DNA of 62,657 nt, the filler included, from Choristocarpus tenellus KU-1152 (lineage: Eukaryota > Protista > Phaeophyceae): assembly GCA_964200185.2 (NCBI GenBank). It is 10 parts of 10 records of this genome, joined end to end, with 100 filler letters (N's around TTAATTAATTAA, not from the genome) between each part and the next. Parts side by side here need not be neighbours in the genome. Positions count along the whole stretch, not along the records: positions 25,207 to 40,788 come from CAXNAD020000969.1; 9 more parts are not named here. The stretch is one strand, 5' to 3'. Both the position numbers and the translations under genes were made by a program. Shown in pieces: positions 25,070 to 40,640 of this stretch. Position 1 is the first letter of the stretch. The number at the start of each line of letters is the position of its first letter. Below the pieces are notes generated by a model. It was not told the DNA's origin. It searched no databases and worked only from the letters and a program-made list of their open reading frames with translations.

Positions 25070-25299
25070 GACACAGACAATAGTTTCATTCTTATTCTCA
25101 TTTCATNNNNNNNNNNNNNNNNNNNNNNNNNNNNNNNNNNNNNNNNNNNNTTAATTAATTAANNNNNNNNNNNNNNNNNNNNNNNNNNNNNNNNNNNNNN
25201 NNNNNNGCCGTCTCTTCATTCTTAAATTGTTTCTTCTACAGAATCTTCTTTTACACATGAATAAAAAGCATATTCTTATCAATCCCCTATGCCCGAAGA

Positions 25300-26210
25300 A
25301 CACTACAAGGATGGAGCAGTCCTTACAGAAAGGCACAAGGAGGGTTGTGTGTTGGATGAGACATGGAAGATCGAAGAAGTTTTAGGGGGGCGAGTAAATG
25401 ACCCGATCTTTGCTAGGATGTACGTGGATGACAGTGTGCTTGTAGATATCCAATAGTTTGATGATGGGAAGAGATTATACAGTTGGCAAACGAGTTCCTT
25501 AATGTTCGACCATATTCGACTGTTAGGATCTAGGAAAGGAGGGGAACCCCCCATCTGTTTTTTATCTCAAGTATTAAACTTCTTTTGATTTTAGAGACGA
25601 AACAGTGTTTAGCAATGTTAGGAAGGGAGGGAGAACTAATGAAGTTAGGGCTAGGATTATTTTTCCTCTTCCTAGGAAGAGCGTCAGAATGATGGGTGTT
25701 TGATGTGGGAGGGGGGTAGACGGGGACGCTGCGGTGAGGAGAAGAGACGTGGTATGGAGGAAAGGAGTAGCCAGGTTGGAGTGGAGGGATAGACACAAGG
25801 CAGATAAGATAGAGTTGACATTACATGGTCAAAAAGGAGACCATGGTAAGAAGGAAGCGGTATAAACGAGGTACAAAGTGGAAGAGCAGTGGAGTGAGGA
25901 AAGCATGGAGGGTTTTGAGGTGATAGTAGCAAACATGGAGTATGCTTCCCAGAACTACCACCTGATGCCCTGTTAATGACATAGAGGGATGTCGAGGAGT
26001 GGAAGGTAATCATAAGGGGCCAGGGAAAGTGTGTCCTGAGGAGGATAGCAAGGGAACTCAAGTTGAGACCGGAGGAATACGCCCTACATGCGGACAGGAT
26101 GGGGGGAGCAACTAGGATGGCAACATTGGGGGCACTGGAGAGTGATACAGAGGGAAGGGAGAAGGAAGTCGGCGGCGCTTATGGCTACGTTAGGGCCAAC
26201 CAAAGAGATC
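25300..26210 (+). mobile_element. Decayed DIRS/Ngaro-like tyrosine-recombinase retrotransposon (RT fragment + YR fragment)
   Basis: RT motif DPIFARMYVDDSVLVD..DHIRLLG (~25400-25530). YR motifs GLGLFFLFLGRASE (~25628), SKGD (~25830) and EYALHADRMGGAT...IQREGRRKSAA..YVRAN (~26075-26200). Interrupted by stops and frameshifts. Confidence 0.75.
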
Positions 26211-26489
26211 CAGTTTGAGTATCGACGGGTTTGGCAGAGAGTTGGAAGGATTAGGTCCAGCACAGGATATGCAACCATGGACTACATATAGATATCACCT
26301 CAAAGGAGGTCAAGTTCAGGCGGGGTAGATCTTCTAGTTCAAAGTTATGGTATTGAAGTGGATGATGGGGTGTTCTTAGATGAATGTGGAGTGGTATTGA
26401 GTGGTGTGGTGTGGTGGAGAACGGGTGGTGTAGTGGAAAGCGATGGAAAGTGTTCTGGAGGAAGGTGCAGTGTCATAGAGTGTGGTTGT

Positions 26490-26690
26490 GGAACAGATTC
26501 GCAGAAATTGACTGCATTGGTGGTGGGTGACTGGAAACCAGTAGCAAAGATTGGTCACACTGGTTGGTTACTGGATACGCAGAATGTGACCGCAATGGGG
26601 TGTGACTGGAAACCTGTGGCAAAGAGTGGTTGCTACGGTTGGTCACTGGTTTCACGGAGTTTGGTCGCTGTGGGTGGTGACTGGAGATGT
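26490..26690. repeat. Degenerate 75-bp tandem repeat (~2.5 copies)
   Basis: GTGACTGGA at ~26527, 26602 and 26677, with similar intervening sequence. Confidence 0.6.
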
Positions 26691-28945
26691 GCATTTTGGT
26701 AATATAGTCGGTGGGGTAACAAGTATAGTGGAGGGAGGGAGGGGAAAAGTGGGGTTATAGTGAGAGAGGAGGAGGAGAGTGGAAGGAATATCAAGACAAA
26801 GCTAATTGATGAACCCAGAAGATGTGAGCAAAGCAAAAAAAGAAAGATATACCACCGACATGGCATTTATGATTCTATCAAGTTCAGCGGTAGTTTGTTG
26901 TGTCATTTATACATGTTATTAGTCAATAGTCGCGGCACTCACATCCTCACGACCACTAGGCACAAACTTCCTGCCGTGCGCTTCCTTCTGTTTTGTTGTT
27001 CGTGATGTTGTGTAGATATTCCTATGCGCGTTATGTGCGATACACATGTACTACCATATATTACGCCAGTGACATGTATAACATATCCTGTACCCTCGGC
27101 AATATTGACACATACATATACAACTGCTACCGGTAGGACCACAGCAGTATGCAATGGACCACACGCAAAAGTAACACAAAATATTCCATAGGTTTGTAGT
27201 GATCGATCCAAATATATAAAATCGTTTTTTGTGTTGTGGATTGGTATATCTATTCGATCATATCACAGCCAAAGCACCAACCAACACCTCAGAGAAACCA
27301 GTCATGCCCTTCAAAAATTCGATCCCTTCTTTACGACTACTACTACCGCTGCTTTATGGTGCAGAGCCGATTAGAGACGGCACAAAATGTAGCCAACAGA
27401 TTCCGTGGGAGGCACAAGCACACAGAGTATTAATGCCAATAGTGATAATGTGTATCCTAAGATGTGTTGCTCCTTTGCTTGTGATATCTGATTATATCCT
27501 CGCCTAGCCCTGGAGTGTTATTAAAGGGCTCCGCATAGGTATACTTATGGTAGGGTTACTACTACTTAATACTGCAAGGTACATTGAGCAACTTCCTTAT
27601 TGTTAACACTGTTTTCATGAGTTCAAGTCGCGTAGTGCTACCACTACTTCGAGTAAGTGAAACGCGGACAGTTCATGTGGGAGAACAGGGAGGAAAAGGC
27701 TAATGCACTTCGCACAGCAATCAACGTGGAAAATACGCAGAAGATGCCGATCCCACGTAACAATTGCCGAAAAAATTTAATCACTTTGGGGAATTTGGAT
27801 TTTAATGTCGAAGAATTAGGTCTTAAAATTAACTAAGTTTCATGTTCTACGTTGTTCATTTCTAAAATTTCTTGAGAGCACTTTTCCTCTAAACTTTTAG
27901 AGGTTCCTCCATGTAATATCACAAGATTAAGCAGTCGCTGCAACATTATGTATGGATACAAAAATGATCTTGCTGCTAAGCATTCTCGAGGTCTCCCATG
28001 CTCGTAGTTGATCTATCTGAACCCATTCATCTCGAGGTTGACATCAGCCAATTCTCGTTCTGTGTTCCTTCAAGCCCAGTGCAGCCGCATCAACGCTTGC
28101 TTAATCGCAGTTCCGCCACTCTTGAGTTATCGATGCCACCATAAATCTTTTACTCCTGTTAGTATCACTTTTTAAAAAGATTGTTGAGGACATCACAACC
28201 ATGAAAGAAAATTGCAAACCTTTTTTATAAGTTGTTTTGTGCAAGTTTTTTGGCTTGCTTTACTGTTGGTATTGTTTCACAGATTGCCACAACACTTACT
28301 TATAAATACTCTGGTAAAAACTGCTGAGCACTATCCGTGCTCTTTTGCACAAAGAGCTGTTGCACTAAGAGTTTTAGCGAACTTCCGCACACATCAACCC
28401 TAACCTATAAAGAAGAGATGTTGCAAGCTCCCAAGACAAAATAATACCTGGAGTTGAACCGATGGTGACAGGGAGCACGGCAAAAATGCGCCCTACAAGC
28501 ACATCCGCAACATAAATCTACAATAGATGGGATGCACTAGGCGTACTAATACTGAGCAGCAGCACTGAAACTCCAAAGCAGGGAAAGATACCCAATTTGG
28601 TGATATACCGTGATCAATCTAAGTTTACTTTCCTACAAAGCCATTAAATATCTTCCTGCAAAATGGCACCTGGCATATGGCAGGATATAGCAATTAAGTA
28701 GCCAAAGAAGTGACAACTGCTGAATATCTTTACAAACCACCAGTATCATTTTTCAAATACATAGGTTACAGCAACTTTTATTATACATATTCCCATCCAG
28801 CACATTGTAACACCAGCCCCCATAATCGCATCATAGACTTGATGCCATGAGAAGTGTTCAGCACAAAATCATTCAAGAATGCACAAACCACGCTCTCAGA
28901 TACATGCACTAACCAGAACTACACACAAATACTATTGTATACTTA

Positions 28946-31900
28946 TTAATAGTCATCGTAGTAATAGTAACCATCATCATCATAGTAATAGTAACCATCG
29001 TCATCATAGTAATAGTAACCATCGTCATCATAGTAATAGTAACCGACGTCACTCAGGCAGTCCTGGTCATCACTGGAGATACAGGATGGCTGCGCACGGC
29101 GAAATTATAGAAGGAAGGATGGTTAAACATTTCAACCGTGTTTTGTTGTCCATGGTACAATGTCAAAGCTACAATTTGCGACAAGAACACAGAGGATGGT
29201 CTAACTGTCACATAGAATCTTACTGAACTCGCTTGAACTGGCACAAACCACAATGAAAGATTGTGGAGTGTCGTGATATGGAACAATATATATATATATA
29301 TATATACAGTGTGTGTACATACACAAGCACTGCATCCTAGAATTACGTGAAGCGTGAGGATGATCTAGAGAGAACACAGAAGAGGTCATGTATTAGAAAA
29401 AAGATTAAAAGAATCATCACTTTCTGAACAAACAAACAAATTTAGTACCAACTCTAATGCGGATTGGTGCCTTCTCAATCATACCATATGGAACAATTGT
29501 CAGTAAGGAAAATTATAGTGTATTCAACTATTCCTCTAGAGGACTAGTTAGAAAACCAACTACTTACAAAGATAGTCCATAGACTCACCGAAATAGTTCC
29601 TGAACCTGGAGAAGGTGTAGTAACCACCACAGGAGGTGTTGTCACTGGGGCAGGTGTAGGCGTCACCACAGGGGGGACTGTCAATGGAGCAGGTGTTGGA
29701 GCCACCACAGGGGGGACTGTCACTGGGGCAGGTGTAGGAGCCACTACAGGAGATGTTGTCACTGGGGCAGGAGTAGGAAGCACCGCAGGGGCAGGAGTCA
29801 CGGCAGGGGGTGTTGGGGCGCCCTGGGGTGTGCCTACAATAACGCCCTCTGTGGTGGCGAGATAGTACGTCTTGTCGGTGCCATATATTTCAGTCCTGCC
29901 ACCAGCAATGCTAGAGACATCCACCTAGAAATGTTGATAAGAAAAAGAGAGTCAAAATCGTTTTTGACAGCTTTAGACGCGATTGCATGCGAATGGAGCA
30001 ATAGAATGGGGAGTTTGTTATAACTACAGAACAGGAAATTTGGTTTCAACAAAGACAACAAAAAACATGATCCAAAAACGTGAATTACTGGTGTATATCC
30101 ATCAATCCGTTGGCAATTGATTGTTTTCCCCTCAACTCTCGATCACTCTGCATATAACTCCAACCACTTGATCTTCGTCCTATGTTTTTTCTTCCTGCTT
30201 CTCTTACTTCTTGCATGAACACAACGAAAAATACATTACCAATCAAACCCTTTACTATTACACCAAGTGTCAATATCACAGAACGCAAACCAATGTTTGA
30301 CACAATTTCGTGGTGATAGTTATGCCTTGCATGTTCAAAATTTCAGGGAGCATTTCTCACCGTCATTGTGCTGGGAACAGTGAGAGGAATATACCCACTT
30401 GTTCCTGAAGCCGCATCAAGCCGTACACTCGTCACCACACCTGCGAAGGTTGAATACGTGTACCAAAGTCGGTAAGCAGCTCGCATATGGATGAGCAAAG
30501 CATATCAGCAGTGGTTACTAAATCCTCTCAATATATCAGGCGACTAATATTATCCCCAGTCTAACTGGTTCAGGAAATAGAGTGAAACGGCTGCCAACTC
30601 ATTGGAGATGACTGAAACACCAGACCGAGGAGATACGAGTACGTAAACTATATCTGAGGATGCAAATTCGTCCTGCAATGATCCTCACCCTTGGGAACTT
30701 TGTACCACCCTGCAACGCCGTAAGTACATTCTCATGCAGCACACAATGACGATTAATGACAACATTTGCCAACCGCTCACTAATCTACAGACAGTGAACC
30801 ATATAATCATTTCAGGATATTAGACAAACCACTTTCAAGTGAAAAATGCAACATCAAAAACTTGCCTGTGTCATCCTTGTCGGCCTTGAGTAGAGGCGCT
30901 GAATTATCCAATGCCTCATGGAGATTGAATTCATCGCAGAGATGGTCAAACTTAAGAGTCTGGTGTTCCGTACACCGGACAAAACATGGAAGTGGGCAGC
31001 ATACGAGATCAGGTCATAGACGAAAGTGGTGAATGAAGGTTACTTTTTTTCCTGTGCATCTGTCGAATAGAATTTTGAGTGAAGCATTGAAGGATAGAAT
31101 CAAAGCCCAAACCATCAATCTACGACCCTACAACCACAGCACTAACCCATGAACATCATTTTCAACATTGTTATCTTAGAATGTCAACCAGTTGACGGAA
31201 TTTTGGTCTCGGTGCTGTCTAAGATCCTGTGGAGACAGTGGTCCACGTGAGTCAGGCAATTTAGAGGCTTCAAGCCTGCATCAAGAGTGTACAGTGAGAA
31301 ACCAGGACACATTGAATACTTCGATCATGTTTACGATCGAACAGCAGAGGATATTGTACGTATGATAGTCTCAAGTAAGAACATAGAGTGTGAATGGTAC
31401 AGTTTTGCGATACAAAGCACTAATATCTTACCACAAGAAAAAGGTGTGTTCAGAGAGTTGTCTACATGCTATCTGCAGATTATGCAATACAAGGTTGTAA
31501 CCAGTGTTTCCAATGTCTTTGACCTTGTATGTTATGTGAATATGATCTGTATGCTTGCCTTGATTGGAAAGTCAATGAAGGATGTGAGCTCAGACATCAT
31601 CTCCTCCATCCAGTACTGCAGGAGAGACTTGTTGGTTCCATCAATCTCAGTAGTGGGAACCACATTCGCCTGAAGGTATCATTCAAAAGACAAAGCAAAT
31701 TGATCAAAAACATCATTGAAGAAACAGCCAATAATTGCGATCCGCACATGAAAAAAAAATGAAAATTGATCTCAAATGCCGGTGCTCACGCACCTGGTGG
31801 AACATATACTTGTCACGGAAACCGCTCAGAATCTGCCTTGTGGTAGCCTCCTTTTCCCATGCAATCAGATTCGCCATGCTGCCAAAGGACTGAATATCTG

Positions 31901-34900
31901 TACAAAGAGAGCAAGTCTGCAGCTCCCCCGTGGAAGGGATATAGATGGAGTAAGGAGTCAAAGTTACTTAGAGGATACGGCCGCGTCCATTTGGGGACCA
32001 AAATCCAATGTTACGATTTTGATGTAATTTTGGGTATCGTGTTTGTTAGGAAGTGTCAATATCCTTGTTCCGAAACATTTTGGAGTAGGAAAATGTCACA
32101 AAAAAAACATCGGAAGCCAAGCCCCAGATGGACAAACAGGGCAAAACTCATACCCTCTAAGACAATTTCACTCAAGCTGCTAGTCCAGTAGAGTAATGAT
32201 GAGCTTAGTCCATTAAGCTGTAGCTGTGTGGGAAAGGAAGTCATCGCTACATGAAGATATTATGCATGACACAAATAATATGTACTGGGTTGGTTGAAAG
32301 AAAACTTTTTTTGATGGTACTAAAAACAGCGACAAGAAAAAAATTGGTGACATAAACGAAAGGACTGCATGTGCAGGTGGGGCATTTTGGTTGTAGACAA
32401 TGAAACGCACCCCCTTGTCTTGACTTGGGTCCAGGTTGGAGCATCCACACACTTTTCGTCTGATCCACTCATTCTCCTGAACAAGGCACTGTCTTACCCA
32501 TAGTAGGAAATGGAGGTTGCACAGTCAAACAAGGGTGAAAGATGTATGTGAAGCTGCCGAGCAAACATCACCCACTGCAGTGCAAGAAAAATAATTGATA
32601 TATATGCTGCACTCCAAATCAGTTTCAATGAGCTCGTTCACTACAACTTACGAGAATGTCTTGCACGTTTTAGAGCATTGATAGTCAAATGTTAGTTGCA
32701 AAACTACTTTTTTCATCCTTCTCAACAAATCCAGGATTTGCCGAAAATGTCAACCTGTGAAATGTGCTGTTGAAGGTCGGTAGTATAAGGAAGGCAGAGA
32801 CATGAGATCCTGAACTGTAAGCACAAGTCAAGGTCCAATCCTCACACTACACCACTTACATCCGCCGTGACGCAATTAAAGTAGATGAAAGTAGCAAACC
32901 GTGGGACAATTGTCATTCCAGCGAAACCTGGAGCACAAGAATGCAATCCCACGACCAGAAAGGCGTGTATTAGTACAGAAATATATGTAGAAGTGTGGGC
33001 TTGGTCACTTCAACATCCCCTGCAGCACAGGAGTTTGGAAGAATATGCTCGATATTCGGTTCGAAGTGGTGCAGCAAAGGGTTTACAACTGTCATCCTGA
33101 GAAGAAACAGTTGTGTTCACTAACGAATATCGTAGATACACACCAAAAACTGTGAAATAGAAACCCACCGTTTGTGACCACAGTTGTGGTAAGAGGGTGG
33201 TAACGATTGACAGCAACAAGGGAGACAGTGCCGATACCAACAAAGGTGTTATCTCCAGGGTAGCATGTCATCAGCTGATCGGCACCACTCCTGTGAAGTA
33301 GGAATGTGAACTCGAACTTTAGGACCAGCAGAAGGGTCGACAAGCTCCAATAAATAGGTTGTGAGACACACAAATATCTTCAAACTTTGTGGATTGCAAA
33401 TAATATATGTGGAGGAGCTTGGCAAACAAATGCAGGAGTTTCCGATTTTCAATACAACTAAATGTCCATTCACACAGTCTTGGTACAGTAACCGAACAGC
33501 TCAGGATTACCAAACAATGTCAGGACGAAGTATACAAACAAACCAAAATATGGTCTATATACTCACGCCAGGCAATACTTGTTGAACAGGCCAGTGATAC
33601 CAGGAGACACCATCGAGTACCAGTTAAAATTTTCGTTTGTGTAGTACCAGTCCATCGCTTTAGCAAGTGCAATGTTCCCTGGACAGCAGCAACCAACGCA
33701 CAGGATTGGAGAGAAATGAAGTTTTACTTCTTACTCCATGAATCATTTTCCTACTTTTTCGCGTGCTTAGTGAGGAATCTTGTGCATAAGTGTACAGGCT
33801 GACATGCAATGTGGAAATGACTGCATTTTGATGTTGGATTATTCTTGGTATCATGGTTCATCAAACGAAGCGATTCTATCCCTGTTCTCTTCCAACTAGG
33901 GTTTTCCTCTGTCCCAAACAAAATGCTCACCTTCATCTTCAATCTGGCAGTCTGAGGCACCAAGATTGTCACGTGAAAGGTGGCTCATGGTGTGGGATTG
34001 CCAATAGAATTTATCCTTCACTGTCGTCAATGTTGCTGTCATGAGATCGTCAGAGCTCCAGAGTCCAGCTGCAAAGTCTGCAGCCATTCCCGGCACAGCC
34101 CCCGAGAGCCAGGTTGTGCCATGGATAGGGGAAATACCTGCACAGATCCCCAATAAATAGCTATTGTAAGTAGGGAGCGGTTACAGGACAAAGAGTGACA
34201 TGTTCTCATACCAGACACACCCAGGACTTATCAAGCTAAGAATCCGATATCCATCTGTCTTTTTGTGTTCTAGGCAATTTCTATTTATGACAATTATTGC
34301 GAAATTTATACCTTGCACCAACAGGAGTAAGACCAATCTAACTAGAGGGAGGTGCAAAGCATTTCTATCATAAGAGTTGGTCTTCCTGAGGTGCGGCATT
34401 TTCAAGGTGGTGGAGGTATGGAAAGGTAAGTAATTGTAAACGGTAAAAGAATATCTTTAGGTGTTCCAGCACAGATCCTCATTGGGGAAACTCGTTGTAC
34501 AGCTAACATGAAGCTTCCTTTTGCAGTTCTAATATTGGGAACAACAGTAACCCACGGATGTTATGGACGGATGTAGGACTTGGACACTTCGAAAAATGCT
34601 CATTAAACTATTGCTCTGGCCTGGAGCACATTGGATGGGAAGAGATTTGATTGCATGCCATATCTTCATGCTTACGGCCTGTACGTGTATTGATTAAGCA
34701 CTATTATGGAACAATATCCATCCTCACCCGTTCCTTGAACTTGGTCACCCTTTGTCAGAAGCCCAGCATCAGAATCTGGGAAGCTCAGCGTGTAAGGAGA
34801 GTTAACCTGTTCAGACATTGAATAGGTTAGCACTGAGATGAACAATTTAATGTACTCTGCATGAATATCTCCAGGTAAAAGTTCCATACAAAAGGAAATT

Positions 34901-37900
34901 CAAGACAATTTTTCTATAATTGTGTACACTGGGGCATGGTCACATATGTAACACTTTTGTGCCGTTGGATACAGGTTTTTTCCTTACGACCCTTTATTTT
35001 TGCGGGTTACAAATCCTATCTGCAGTTTTCAACATATTTATTATGTCCAATAAATACTTCATTCTACTTTCACACCATCTTTTCTGCTTGCCCATCCAAG
35101 AGTCCTTTGAAATATAGGTTCAAATGTAAGATATATAAATTCTATGTAGTACCTCAAGTCTTCGGTATCCGTAGGTTTTGCCAAGAATTCGTGTTTCACT
35201 CACTTTTTCAAGGACCCCATTTCCGTTGTAGGCAAATTCAACGATTACATCAGACCCATATTGTGCGTTCATAGCGTCTTGGAATGCACCAAACTGCTCG
35301 AAGTCTGACCCTGTCATTCGAACTTCCTGTAGTCGAGTTGGCCATTTATCCATGAGTCAGTGTACTTGAAAATGTTGTTTGGCTATTGATTATTGTGTGG
35401 TTTGATTTTGTGGTTAAGAACAACATACTTAAGAATACAGTATAATGCGAAAGAGGGAAGATAGAAGGCAGTGAAGAAGTTGGCCACAGAATGAAAAAAA
35501 GAGAAATTTTGATAAATTTTATTGGTAGGTATGGCATCACTCTGAGCAAGATCCCAAGCTTACAGTGCCCTCATTGTTTCCACCGTCGTACACCCATTGG
35601 CCTGTGCCAAGGTAAAGATCATCCACCACTGGACCCAAGTAGAAGCGTCTTTCACCCTATGAATATGATTCAGATTTTGACAGGGAAGAAAGGACAATAG
35701 CAACAAAGCATTAGCCGTTTTGATATGTACGAATACAGTAAGTTTAGGTCTAAATCCAGTGTCTTGAAGAGTGATGTTTTTTTTTCCTTGCACCATGATT
35801 GCAAAGTCTGCATTACCTGGAATACTCCTTTGGTTCCCCACTCCGTGACAAAATGTGACCAAGCCCAGGAGCCCATATCAAACCAAGCCATGGTGAAGAA
35901 GATATACAGCTCTTCCAAGCCATCCATCCCGATCCACTCTACCATAGCGGCAGAAGGGAAGTTTTGGGCACTCAACAACGGTGTACCAGCAGCATTCGCA
36001 TATCTGAGATAGCAACATGATTTATTGGTAAGTATTTCGTCACGTCAATATGTTTCGGTCCCAAGCACTACAAGAATTAGTCACATATATATCCAAGTTT
36101 GAGGAAAGTAAAGAAACTATAATGTAGAGATTGAAAGTATCTTAGAGGGTAGGAGTTTTGCCCTGTTTGTCCGTTTGAGGCTTGGCTTCCCATGGGTTTT
36201 TTAGGACATTTTCCTACTCCAATTTTTTTCGTTAGTAGGTAAAATGTGTGCGTTATGAAAAGGTGTCCAGAACATGGATATTGGCACTTCCTAACAAACA
36301 TGAAGGTCAAAATTACATCGAAATCGCAGCGATGGATTTTGGCCCCCAAATGGACGCGGCTCTACCCTCTAAGATACTTTGAGAGATTTCATGGTGTAAT
36401 ACCTTGTTATCCATCCATGCAGTACACTAGTATATAAATTACAAAACTATAGGACCCGAGGTCGATTAGATAAGGTGATCATAACAAGGAAATAGTGTGG
36501 AGGAAAGTACAAGAACAAGTTGCCTACTGCTCCCAGAAGAAAACTTAACTATTTGACAGTGGGGCAAAAGAGAAGTCAGGGCAATAAGTTGAGGACTCAC
36601 GAGCTGAGAATGGTGGCTGTTCCATTGTCAAATGTTGTTGCGTACTGGTGAAGGGGACGAGTGAACATGTTGTTCTTCTGGGGATCAGTGGCCATGCCGT
36701 CCTTAACTACCGTAGAAATCGAGTCCCCTGCAGCTGTTTATCACGGGTTAACAAGAACAAAATCATGTTCACCACAGAACCAATCAACAACGTGAGAATG
36801 AGTTCTCAGTTGAAATGGAGTAACACTATTTCATGCATTAACCAACATTTTGCTGCACACTATTTCGTCAAGTCGAAGCACCAACCCCTTGCAAAATGTG
36901 TTCCACATCTTTGCATTTTTGATCCAAGAAGTGAACCTCCATTACGGATCCGTGAAAGCGACCAGTACCTTCCATAATCAGTACCAATCAATTCAACACC
37001 ACTGGAATTCTTCAGGCAACAGGTATACACTACGATCAACCCGTGGAATGGTTTTGTTTCGTTGGCAACAAATGCAGCAATTCTCTATTGGAACTTCATT
37101 CGATACCATTCTTTGCGAACTATAGTACAAAGCTGTTGCCTAACAATGCTGCACTCTATAGCGAGAGGTTACATGAACGTCTCGCGCATGGATGTTTCGA
37201 CAGAAATGATCGGCCTTTTATCACGTACGTGTAAGCTTCACCAGCGGAGGGACTGGTACCTCTGTCGACCACAATGGGGGTGCGAACGTCTGACTGATCC
37301 TCATCCTAATGTTTGCTTCCACATCATTAGCTGCATCGGAGCTTTCGAACCATACAAGCCGGACCTGAAACGTTTCCACAATTCATCGGTTTCTCTGTCT
37401 TTAATCGCGCCTCTGCAAGGCAGAACAAGGAGAAAAATAATGGAAGCTTCACGATGTCTTCCAGCATTATGTAGCGACAAGAGTTCTGCTGTCTGTTGGC
37501 CAAGCCAAGCTGGTTGCATGAGGAATGAAAACTACAGCTTTGACAGGAAGGTTCCACAAAATATCACGTTTAAAAAGTTATCTTCGTTGCCACAAGTGAA
37601 AGACGGTGTAACACAAATTTTCGCTATTGAAGAGGCCTTACCAACCTACGTTAGTGAAAACAGACTTCAAGGTCGTCCGTGTTGAGTTGCGAAACCGGAT
37701 TATCGGAACATTGAATGGTGTTGTCAAATACCTCTGTTCTCCAAGGTCTAAATTGCCCTAAAACAAACCTTGAATGCTCGGGCATAATCCTGAAGCTCCG
37801 TTTTCTGCGAAGCAGTCGGAGTTATTCCGATGTAGATCACATCGCACTTGCCTGTACCATCATTGTTATTCAGTGGCAAGGTATCTGTGGGAGCCACGAT

Positions 37901-38459
37901 CACGTTCTTCACAGAAGAGCAACAGGTTGACGGTGTGAGAGATATGCAGGTTACGGAAAGGGCAGGGTCAGGGCAGCAACATCAAAAATCATCACTTACT
38001 TAAATATCGCACCAGCGACTGGTTGACCACATCAACAACCCACACATATGTGAGTGGACTTCAACTACACAAACCTGGGCAGCAGACCAGAAGCCCTTGT
38101 ACCACTCAGAGATGATGTATGCGTCACCCACACCTGGTGTACTGGCATCCTGGTTGGGTGTGTGGAGGTCTCAAGATTTAGCAAATAAAAACGGATCCCA
38201 GTTACATGAGCCAAACTATCTTGAACCCTTCACTGTACAACAGGATTGAGCTCATCTTCGATATACTGTATCCCTTCCAAAGTATAAGTAGAAACTAGAT
38301 TTTCAGAGTGTGGAGGAAGAGAAAAAAGTTATGTTTTGTCATAAACCCTCTCACCAAAACGGCTGAGGTGAGAATGCATGGCTGCATATCCACAGAGACT
38401 TGGCCCATAACTGGTGAGAGAAGGGTAAGAGCACATGCTGCCAATGAGAGGCGAACCAT
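28946..38459 (-). CDS. Secreted Agd3-like (CE18-type) polysaccharide de-N-acetylase with Pro/Thr linker and Tyr/Asp tail (2544 nt, 847 aa); 20 exons: 38459-38355, 38149-38075, 37906-37769, 37364-37229, 36733-36601, 36003-35817, 35656-35564, 35326-35204, 34806-34728, 34137-33931, 33678-33567, 33290-33169, 32927-32860, 32488-32411, 31916-31794, 31669-31559, 30959-30866, 30440-30361, 29924-29589, 29089-28946
   Basis: All 19 introns are phase-consistent (17 GT-AG, 2 GC-AG) and the CDS has no internal stop. Signal peptide MVRLSLAACALTLLSPVMG. Motifs appear in Agd3 order: EWGTKGVFQGERRFYLGPVVDDLYL, EFAYNGNG, FYWQSHTMSH, PGITGLFN, GDNT, TNGFAG..IVPRFATFIYFNC, DKYMFHQAN, SLLQYW, PLTVP, EIYGTD. Confidence 0.85.
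28949..29044 (-). repeat. Coding 24-bp tandem repeat x4 encoding GYYYYDDD
   Basis: GGTTACTATTACTA(T/C)GATGA(C/T)GAT units on the - strand; variation between units is mostly synonymous. Confidence 0.85.
31959..32169. mobile_element. MITE family B, in intron 14 of the Agd3-like gene
   Basis: CAAAGTTACTTAGAGGATA...CAAAACTCATACCCTCTAAGA. Confidence 0.8.
36133..36381. mobile_element. MITE family B, in intron 5 of the Agd3-like gene
   Basis: Near-perfect TIRs AAAGTATCTTAGAGGGTAG...CTACCCTCTAAGATACTTTG; AGAGATT occurs on both flanks. Confidence 0.85.
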
Positions 38460-39129: not shown

Positions 39130-40640
39130 TGGTACCTACGAAGACTAAAAAATATTTTTTTTGTTGTAGTATTGTAAGTGGGAAATATAGAATTACCCAA
39201 GGATATTTTTTCTGCAAAATAAACGTAATAGATATTATACTACATTTACCACGACTACTGCTACTGTTGCTGATACAAGGATCCTTCCAACATCGGTTTG
39301 GTTTTTCGTTGACACATCTGGAAAATGTGGGTAGGGAAAATATTATTCTTATTCCTTTTACAAATATTATGAGTATATTCTCGCGAATATATTTTGCCGA
39401 CTGTCTCAGTCCTATGTTCATCATATTAAGAGTGAGTATTATTACCTTCCTCCCATGGTCAGAGGTTTTATTAATACATCGTACCACTTCTCACATTACT
39501 TGTTACTACCTACTGTGCGATTATGTTATGTACTAACTCCGTTCATGTCCTTCTCTCGTATATATGGTACACATACATGTATGTACGTATATATTATGGT
39601 GCATCACCTTCCTCCCATATAGTCAGAGGTATTATTGATAAATCGCACCACTTCTCACATTATTTGCTACTAAGATATACCTTCTGTGCGACTATCGAAT
39701 GTACTTGCAAACAACAGATGTACTTAGTTCATGTCCTCCTTCTCGTATATGTGCATGTGTATATTACTATGCCGATTTACATCTTGAACATGTCATGGAA
39801 GGAAGATTATCATACACATATTTTGCCGTTGAAGAACATTAATAATTTTTATTAAGTGGACGTATTAGTAAGGATTACCATCAACTAAAATCGATCATAG
39901 AAAAATGTTTCTCACATTTGCGACAACTGTTGCTTTTTCAGGGGTTGTTCTAATATTTGACTGGCTTTTCATTGGTTTTTCCCCTAACACCTATCTGTAA
40001 AATGTAAGAGGGTATAATAATAAAAATATCATCAACTTCAGTACGGGGACTATGTCTACCAATAATGGTTAGAGTCGTAACGTTACACTACTTCTAACAC
40101 TGTTTTTATTTTATTATTATGACCTCTGACATTTTATGGATGTGTCAGGTGTGAAACAAATGAAAACTATCACAATGCAATATATCCCCCCTGACACATC
40201 TGCAAAATGTCAGAGGGCATAATAATAAAATACAATGTTTGATAGTGGTGAAGTAACTGATAGATTAGTGGTTTCCACACTTACAGTGTTTTATAGTCTT
40301 CTCACGTTTAGGATATTATATTTCTTTAGGGCTAATAACGACATATGAATTTTATTATTATGCCCTCTCTAATATTTTGCCGATGTGTCAGGGGGGAAAC
40401 CAATGAAAACTATACGTATGTCGTTATTAGCTCTAAAGAAATAAAATCATATGTATTTTATTATTATGCCCTCTGACATTTTGCAGATGTGTCAGGGGGG
40501 AAACCAATGAAAACTATATATTATATATATGTGTCAGGGAACATATGTATTGTTTTCATTGGTTTTCCCCCTGACACATCTGCAAAATGTCAGAGGGCAT
40601 AAATACTTTATTGAAAACTATACATATGTCAGTATATGTG
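39130..40640. repeat. Cluster of family C AT-rich repeats in direct and inverted orientation
   Basis: CCCCTGACACATCTGCAAAATGTCAGAGGGCATAA and its reverse complement recur at ~40120, 40190, 40360, 40465 and 40568, with degenerate copies at 39310 and 39980. Confidence 0.85.

What the first reader, a model, noticed from the sequence alone, without database searches (positions are those of the whole stretch)
28946..29924. Pro/Thr stalk plus a terminal (GYYYYDDD)x4 Tyr/Asp tail: candidate wall-anchoring or cross-linking module
Seen: after the catalytic domain comes a (PTPAPVT..PVV)-type linker. A separate last exon then encodes PSCISSDDQDCLSDV-GYYYYDDD-GYYYYDDD-GYYYYDDD-GYYYYDDY*. Differences between the 24-bp units are mostly synonymous (GAC/GAT, TAT/TAC), which hints at protein-level constraint. 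There is no transmembrane segment or hydrophobic GPI signal. Inference: Tyr runs flanked by Asp suit oxidative di-tyrosine or halotyrosine cross-linking (peroxidases/haloperoxidases), tyrosine sulfation, Ca2+ binding, or electrostatic binding to the enzyme's own cationic product. It may be an undescribed tag for tethering secreted enzymes to the extracellular matrix.
Basis: partly seen in the sequence, partly recalled or inferred. Interest (0 to 1): 0.8.

Follow-up and report, generated by a model that had tools for sequence, protein, structure and literature searches.

The report
Acidic tyrosine tail on algal deacetylase
A secreted sugar-modifying enzyme of an early-branching brown alga ends in a flexible stalk and a small, separately encoded, strongly acidic tyrosine-rich tip that probably holds the enzyme in the cell wall; a related alga keeps the tip but with a different repeat, so the striking tyrosine run itself is not the conserved part.

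Summary
The piece is a contig of the brown alga Choristocarpus tenellus carrying a 20-exon gene for a secreted Agd3/CE18-type carbohydrate deacetylase with all catalytic residues intact. A run that behaves as RNA confirms the 29589/29089 junction (depth 950 against 14 unspliced) and nine other introns. The last exon codes a 15-residue two-cysteine head plus four Gly-Tyr4-Asp3 units (15 Asp, 17 Tyr, no basic residue). Discosporangium mesarthrocarpum (same order, other family) has a homologous phase-0 last exon after its own stalk. Its head is conserved (9/15 identical, 6 of these with changed synonymous codons), but the repeat is a different 11-mer with one Tyr. So the cysteine head, acidity and Gly-Tyr...Asp-Asp are conserved; the Tyr run is not. 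Other family members carry other tails, many acidic, or none. Best reading: a swappable polyanionic, aromatic wall-retention module in the slot where such enzymes carry binding modules (42%). Covalent tyrosine cross-linking, a folded beta-meander that binds proteins, sulfation and near-neutral repeat growth are rivals. No function was tested. No matching family was found.

The parts
38355..38459 (-). Exon 1: start codon and signal-peptide-like N-terminus (basic residue, hydrophobic core, likely cleavage near residue 19-20); missing from the public 721-aa model
   Evidence: Hydropathy 2.3 over 11 residues; collinear with the N-termini of P0078 and P0079; GT donor, phase fits. Not covered by the read check.
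35817..38149 (-). Exons 2-6 (38149-38075, 37906-37769, 37364-37229, 36733-36601, 36003-35817): N-terminal region, position of the CBM87 domain of Agd3
   Evidence: AG/GT sites and phases; tblastn of homologues; P0001 covers it from mid exon 4; Pfam CBM87 only E 0.062 on P0078.
30866..35656 (-). Exons 7-17: Agd3/CE18 deacetylase domain with Asp144-Asp145, His279/His283, Arg387, Met464/His466 (P0001 numbering); two GC-AG introns after exons 16 and 17
   Evidence: Pfam Agd3_CE 169 bits, E 1.9e-49; 6NWZ E 3e-33; Foldseek E 1e-31; introns below 34200 seen in X3.
29835..30440 (-). Exon 18 (30440-30361) and first 30 codons of exon 19: beta-rich C-terminal end of the enzyme core
   Evidence: Strands 527-584 in the AlphaFold model; aligned to 6NWZ up to residue 580.
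29589..29834 (-). Pro/Thr/Val stalk, 82 residues (27 Pro, 17 Thr, 16 Val), 13-residue unit
   Evidence: pLDDT under 50 from residue 605.
29090..29588 (-). Last intron, phase 0, GT..AG, 499 nt
   Evidence: Skipped in X3 at depth 950.
29045..29089 (-). Head of the last exon, 15 residues with Cys-x7-Cys and four Asp; conserved in Discosporangium
   Evidence: 9/15 identical, 6 of the 9 with different synonymous codons; pairwise E 6e-5.
28949..29044 (-). Four 24-nt units coding Gly-Tyr4-Asp3 (last residue Tyr instead of Asp), followed by the stop at 28948-28946
28379..28945 (-). 3' untranslated region (at least to 28379), AATAAA at 28782
   Evidence: X3 contig 28379-29006, depth 679. Contigs cannot fix the true RNA end.

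Best explanation
The gene makes a secreted, roughly 847-residue Agd3/CE18-type metal-dependent N-acetylhexosamine deacetylase (family and catalytic residues shown; activity and substrate inferred from Agd3). An extended Pro/Thr stalk, probably glycosylated (inferred), holds away from the enzyme a 47-residue tip encoded by its own exon (shown). The tip has a small disulfide-closed acidic head (Cys pair conserved, bond inferred) and a polyanionic repeat with exposed tyrosines. It most likely works as a non-covalent retention module: the carboxylates pair with free amines of the deacetylated polymer or bridge through Ca2+ to alginate, and the tyrosines add stacking or cation-pi contacts (inferred). 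It fills the slot that other family members fill with WSC domains, other acidic tails or Cys/Lys-rich tails. Selection keeps the head, the charge and Gly-Tyr near Asp-Asp, while the repeat unit turns over.
For: Junction and expression. Enzyme identity (motifs as defined in PMC7229062). Homologous last exon in Discosporangium with the same phase-0 boundary after a stalk, conserved head and a new acidic repeat with no Lys or Arg; its units differ 7 synonymous to 3 non-synonymous, P 0.001-0.006. 13 of 20 family tails of 40 or more residues end with net charge -0.15 per residue or lower, this one the lowest at -0.35. Several paralogues carry WSC domains. Brown algae hold about five GH114 genes, a family with alpha-1,4-galactosaminidase activity (PMC11468063), and a close relative of the enzyme lies near a Spherulin4 gene; both fit a galactosaminogalactan-like substrate. 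The wall has cation-bridged alginate and calcium (PMC12223506).
Against: No binding data. My paper searches returned no report of a deacetylated galactosamine polymer in brown algae. The enzyme cores are themselves acidic (-0.04 to -0.115), so acidity may be a general trait of these secreted proteins. Most of the 13 acidic tails are related Ectocarpales sequences, not independent cases. One C. tenellus paralogue has no tail and another a basic one. Only two species define the module, and orthology between P0001 and the Discosporangium pair is not resolved in the tree. An anionic tip would be repelled by alginate and fucans without Ca2+.
Confidence: 0.42

Rival explanations
1. The tip is a covalent anchor: wall peroxidases or vanadium haloperoxidases oxidise or halogenate the tyrosines and couple them to each other or to phlorotannins, fixing the enzyme in the wall.
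For: 17 Tyr in 32 terminal residues; haloperoxidases were acquired early in brown algae and a bacterial-type gene is listed for C. tenellus (10.1101/2024.02.19.579948); halogenated polyphenolics occur in the wall (PMC12223506). Discosporangium keeps five Tyr.
Against: The Tyr run is not conserved. Known cross-linking wall and adhesive proteins rich in Tyr tend to be Lys-rich (PMC4220933; extensin motifs from my own knowledge), whereas this tip has no basic residue. No paper held all the relevant terms.
Confidence: 0.18
2. The tip is a nearly neutral low-complexity end: a short old last exon whose 3' part expands by slippage in each lineage, limited only by the need to stay soluble and acidic.
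For: Units 1 and 2 are identical and the array has only three differences; the unit is wholly different in Discosporangium; tails vary freely across the family and can be absent; no other protein with this tail was found.
Against: The head is conserved while its synonymous sites have changed; the Discosporangium repeat shows a significant synonymous excess; both lineages arrived at Gly-Tyr followed within a few residues by Asp-Asp; Tyr codons alternate TAC/TAT, so this is not a simple trinucleotide run.
Confidence: 0.17
3. The repeat folds into a single-layer antiparallel beta-meander (each Tyr4 a strand, each Asp3-Gly a turn) whose tyrosine faces bind proline-rich chains, such as neighbouring stalks, or stack into oligomers, as the OCRE domain does with proline-rich motifs.
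For: Single-sequence AlphaFold gives five strands over residues 684-719 with pLDDT about 72-75 in the repeats. Weak in-register matches to the OCRE domains of RBM5 and RBM10 (E 3.6-8.5); OCRE is an acidic, period-8, Tyr-rich sheet that binds proline-rich motifs (PMC5127646).
Against: pTM 0.35; the same region is under 50 in the full-length model; fold searches give only generic meanders (best Z 5.6); Pfam OCRE does not hit. The Pro-rich Discosporangium unit is unlikely to form this sheet. OCRE needs basic residues beside the proline motif, and the stalk has none.
Confidence: 0.13
4. The tip is a multi-site tyrosine-sulfation tag that raises its negative charge and serves as a recognition or sorting signal.
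For: In both species each Tyr has several Asp close by, Gly or Pro nearby and no basic residue, the context preferred by tyrosylprotein sulfotransferases (my own knowledge). This is the one feature both repeats share exactly.
Against: No report of such an enzyme or of sulfotyrosine in brown algae turned up; I could not test the proteome for it. It is compatible with the best explanation as a modifier rather than a separate function.
Confidence: 0.1

Closest known systems
Agd3 of Aspergillus fumigatus (CE18, PDB 6NWZ, PMC7229062)
   Same: Secreted; same catalytic domain and four catalytic motifs; alignment spans residues 50-580; Foldseek TM 0.61 over 600 columns.
   Different: 26% identity; algal Cys-rich insertion in the catalytic domain; CBM87 not detected above threshold; Pro/Thr stalk and acidic Tyr tip added; no GAG cluster genes in this piece; activity untested.
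Modular secreted carbohydrate-active enzymes with catalytic domain, Pro/Thr linker and small terminal binding module (for example fungal cellulases with CBM1; from my own knowledge)
   Same: Same three-part layout; terminal module small, aromatic, with cysteines, on its own exon.
   Different: The tip matches no CBM or Pfam family, is a low-complexity polyanionic repeat, and its unit is not conserved between two genera.
OCRE domain of RBM5/RBM10 (PMC5127646)
   Same: Period of eight residues, runs of Tyr, acidic surface, predicted beta-meander.
   Different: Four perfect units against five imperfect ones; Gly one place earlier; extracellular against nuclear; E-values not significant; no Pfam or fold match. 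A resemblance, at most convergent.
YG / choline-binding repeats of streptococcal glucansucrases and autolysins (from my own knowledge)
   Same: Gly, aromatic run, Asp-x-x-Gly turn; aromatic-plus-acidic binding of sugars or cationic amines.
   Different: Those repeats are about 20 residues and form a solenoid; no Pfam hit, only insignificant Foldseek rows.
Tyr-rich diatom wall proteins (cingulins, AC3362; PMC4220933)
   Same: Stramenopile, secreted, Tyr-rich, part of a wall matrix.
   Different: They are Lys-rich structural proteins of silica walls; this is a Lys-free tip on an enzyme; no sequence link shown.

Membership tests
CE18 / Agd3 deacetylase | Agd3_CE domain above curated cut-off | tested here: met
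   169.1 bits against 27.6, profile 4-363 of 366
CE18 / Agd3 deacetylase | CM1 Asp-Asp, CM2 HxxxH, CM3 Arg, CM4 Met-x-His | tested here: met
   D144, D145, H279, H283, R387, M464, H466 aligned to 6NWZ and conserved in the family
CE18 / Agd3 deacetylase | N-terminal CBM87 domain | tested here: inconclusive
   Pfam CBM87 E 0.062 on P0078; sequence and fold alignments to 6NWZ extend into this region
CE18 / Agd3 deacetylase | Metal-dependent deacetylation of alpha-1,4-GalNAc polymers | not testable with these tools
   Needs an assay
Fungal GAG gene cluster | Linkage to gtb3, ega3, sph3, uge3 | tested here: not met
   No other intact gene found in the 15.6-kb piece; neighbours of algal homologues are paralogues or unrelated
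OCRE domain | Five imperfect octamer repeats matching the OCRE profile | tested here: not met
   Four units; no Pfam hit at E up to 10; phmmer E 3.6-8.5
OCRE domain | Twisted antiparallel beta-sheet fold | tested here: inconclusive
   Meander in single-sequence model, pTM 0.35; not in full-length model; OCRE not among listed fold matches
Choline-binding / YG repeats | About 20-residue repeat matching the cell-wall-binding profiles | tested here: not met
   Period 8; no Pfam hit
GPI-anchored or membrane-tailed enzyme | Hydrophobic C-terminal segment | tested here: not met
   Best 11-residue hydropathy -0.26 in the last 48 residues; spliced form dominates about 70 to 1
Tyrosine-sulfated proteins | Tyr in acidic, non-basic context in a secreted protein | tested here: met
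   Both species; a sequence context only
Tyrosine-sulfated proteins | Host sulfotransferase present and site modified | not testable with these tools
   No proteome search possible; literature blank

The most novel reading that the evidence does not exclude
Early-branching brown algae have an undescribed exon-borne tethering module (cysteine loop plus acidic Tyr repeat, folding as a small beta-meander in C. tenellus) that docks a CE18 deacetylase on a cationic, galactosaminogalactan-like wall polymer not yet recognised in brown algae, made by a multigene family that giant viruses have also picked up.
Probability: 0.2. Interest if true: 0.75.

Novelty: new variant of a known kind. Interest (0 to 1): 0.45.

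Why it matters
If the tip retains the enzyme in the wall, it is a 47-residue, genetically encodable tag for binding cationic or calcium-bridged marine polysaccharides, and a case where a module keeps its chemistry while its repeat unit is replaced. The wider point may matter more: brown algae carry a multigene family of intact Agd3-like deacetylases, which I found mentioned only as one row of a supplementary table. With their GH114 genes this predicts an amino-sugar polymer missing from current wall models, and that is directly testable.

Tried and rejected
Read-through of the last intron to a hydrophobic end: rejected as the main product (13.9 against 950; not conserved in Discosporangium). 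GPI or membrane anchor: rejected. Synonymous-change argument within the window's four units: not significant. Searches with the tail alone found nothing: word search, region search among 397-1262-residue proteins (only itself), Pfam, Atlas, motif scans of 118 proteins and 17 loci (only P0001 and P0080). Single-exon PDB searches missed Agd3. Metagenome scans with single exons gave one short hit. No Rfam match. Canonical EF-hand, thrombospondin type 3 and LDL-receptor A motifs were considered by eye and rejected on spacing. Fold matches of the tail model (phage spikes, CPAP TCP, polo boxes) are generic. I did not search with my own joined 20-exon model; searches were by exon or with the public entry P0001.

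Full report
Observation. The feature lies on the minus strand as the last two exons of a spliced gene. Exon 29924-29589 codes the end of the enzyme core and an 82-residue stalk (27 Pro, 17 Thr, 16 Val). Exon 29089-28946 codes a 15-residue head with two cysteines and four Gly-Tyr4-Asp3 units, the last ending in Tyr. Three public runs hold the stretch, none recorded as RNA. X1 and X2 cover it evenly like DNA. X3 skips ten introns at GT-AG or GC-AG sites, including 29588-29090 at depth 950, while the unspliced form has depth 13.9 and a 3' UTR contig runs on to 28379. All runs are from one study, and contigs break inside the repeat, so the copy number rests on the assembly. There is no hydrophobic C-terminal segment.

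Identity of the gene. Four separate exons gave collinear sub-threshold hits to Pfam Agd3_CE. Family scans and exon searches left the relatives open, so I used the large search once, with one catalytic exon. It returned a 721-residue protein identical over that exon, P0001, which is CAM9244706.1 of the brown alga Choristocarpus tenellus on a 15,582-bp contig, the length of this piece. P0001 matches Agd3_CE at 169 bits, Agd3 (6NWZ) at E 3e-33, and its model matches 6NWZ at E 1e-31. The residues that PMC7229062 shows essential are all present: D144, D145, H279, H283, R387, M464, H466. Reading exon by exon, I find 20 exons and 847 codons, starting with a signal-peptide-like exon at 38459 that the public model lacks and that lines up with homologues. 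Exons above 34200 were not checked with reads.

What is conserved in the tail. The family search gave 47 proteins, nearly all from brown algae or related marine contigs. Only one other has a related end: P0080 of Discosporangium mesarthrocarpum, same order, different family. After its own Pro/Ser/Val stalk comes a phase-0 intron and a separate last exon (L002 12939-13151). Its head matches the window's at 9 of 15 residues, both cysteines included, and 6 of those 9 use different synonymous codons (pairwise E 6e-5), which points to purifying selection. The repeat behind it is different: five copies of an 11-residue unit with three Asp, three Pro or Gln pairs around Gly, and one Tyr. Its units differ by 7 synonymous and 3 non-synonymous changes (P 0.001-0.006), whereas the window's 2 to 1 is not significant (P 0.05-0.14). 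What both share is a cysteine head, no basic residue, high Asp content, and Gly-Tyr followed shortly by Asp-Asp. The Tyr4 run is particular to C. tenellus. The second Discosporangium paralogue is cut by its contig end inside the stalk. The tree places the five Discosporangiales sequences outside a supported group of 29 others but does not resolve orthology among them; a subset of 35 sequences was used and the outgroup branch is long.

The rest of the family. C-termini vary freely: a basic Cys/Lys tail on another last exon and an apparently tail-less copy in C. tenellus itself, Pro/Thr/Ala stalks, Glu/Ala-rich acidic tails, and N-terminal WSC domains elsewhere. Thirteen of 20 longer tails end strongly acidic, this one most so, but many are close relatives and the cores are acidic too. 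No other protein with the window's tail was found; these searches are weak for such sequence.

Structure of the tip. In the full-length model residues 605-721 are below pLDDT 50. Folded alone, the last exon forms a five-stranded meander, each Tyr run a strand, pLDDT about 72-75, pTM 0.35. Fold searches give only generic sheets. Weak in-register similarity to OCRE domains (PMC5127646) is a lead, not membership. The proline-rich Discosporangium unit is unlikely to share this fold, so it can at most be a local refinement.

Mechanism. Shown: a spliced, expressed gene for an intact CE18-type enzyme with stalk and exon-borne acidic tip under partial constraint. Inferred: secretion, deacetylation of an N-acetylhexosamine polymer giving free amines, and retention by the tip through charge pairing with that product or calcium bridging to alginate, helped by tyrosine contacts (42%). 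Indirect support for the substrate comes from GH114 genes in brown algae (PMC11468063) and a Spherulin4 gene near a close relative; against it, my searches returned no report of such a polymer in brown algae. Rivals are covalent tyrosine cross-linking (18%; haloperoxidases are available, but the Tyr run is not conserved), near-neutral repeat growth (17%), a protein-binding meander (13%) and sulfation as the main role (10%).

Comparison and verdict. The enzyme is a new member of CE18 by domain and catalytic motifs; CBM87 is inconclusive and activity untested. The layout is the familiar catalytic domain, linker and terminal module. The tip belongs to no family I could test: it fails OCRE and choline-binding repeat criteria and has no membrane anchor. 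It is a new variant of a known kind, known from two species, with no functional data. Interest 0.45. The side findings, a little-noted Agd3-like family across brown algae and its presence in giant-virus contigs, may deserve their own follow-up.

Noticed in passing
window 38459-37305 (minus): The public model CAM9244706.1 starts at an internal Met; three more exons and part of a fourth, including a signal-peptide-like start, lie upstream and match homologues, giving 847 residues.
   Followed up: partly
family-wide: Brown algae hold a multigene family of Agd3-like deacetylases with intact motifs, in tandem arrays in Ectocarpus and apparently Undaria and Pylaiella, often fused to WSC domains. CE18 appears once in the held part of the Phaeoexplorer CAZyme table and not in the wall-gene paper.
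   Followed up: partly
L010-L013, L015-L017: Intronless Agd3-like genes of the brown-algal type (48-50% identical) sit in giant-virus contigs beside VLTF3, D5, A22 and a hybrid histidine kinase; P0088 nests inside the brown algal part of the tree. Direction of transfer not tested.
   Followed up: partly
L009 4804-14229; also L018, L019: Gene-dense marine contigs with a Spherulin4 (Sph3-like) gene 4 kb from an Agd3-like gene that has GT-AG introns, one holding HNH endonuclease ORFs, and its own Pro/Thr stalk running off the contig end. Viral or cellular origin not established.
   Followed up: partly
L004 9796-9963: C. tenellus paralogue P0002 has no stalk and a different last exon coding a basic Cys/Lys-rich tail (8 Cys, 14 Lys/Arg); no Pfam match. 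Paralogue P0079 appears to stop right after the core at L005 14530.
   Followed up: partly
window 36134-36380 and 31955-32173: Two intronic copies of a MITE-like element of about 250 bp; the first has perfect 19-bp terminal inverted repeats. Summed contig depth is about 1e6 against 20 for single-copy DNA, so it is very abundant; copies also lie in L004.
   Followed up: partly
window 39966-40602: Cluster of palindromic AT-rich repeats of about 60 bp, also present upstream of both paralogues (L004, L005); probably another dispersed repeat family.
   Followed up: no
window 31558 and 30865: Two consecutive introns use GC donors, both supported by X3.
   Followed up: yes
window 25207-26700: Strand-skewed stretch with broken ORFs and a 75-bp tandem repeat at 26496-26685; by eye a decayed retroelement, no Pfam hit.
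   Followed up: no
P0001 model: After Agd3 the next fold matches are human heparan sulfate N-deacetylase/N-sulfotransferase 1 (E 1e-8), so an N-acetylglucosamine substrate is not excluded.
   Followed up: no
P0060, P0095, P0093-P0099, P0107, P0116: A second acidic Glu/Ala-rich C-terminal tail type, without Tyr, recurs in Ectocarpales and Sphacelaria homologues.
   Followed up: no
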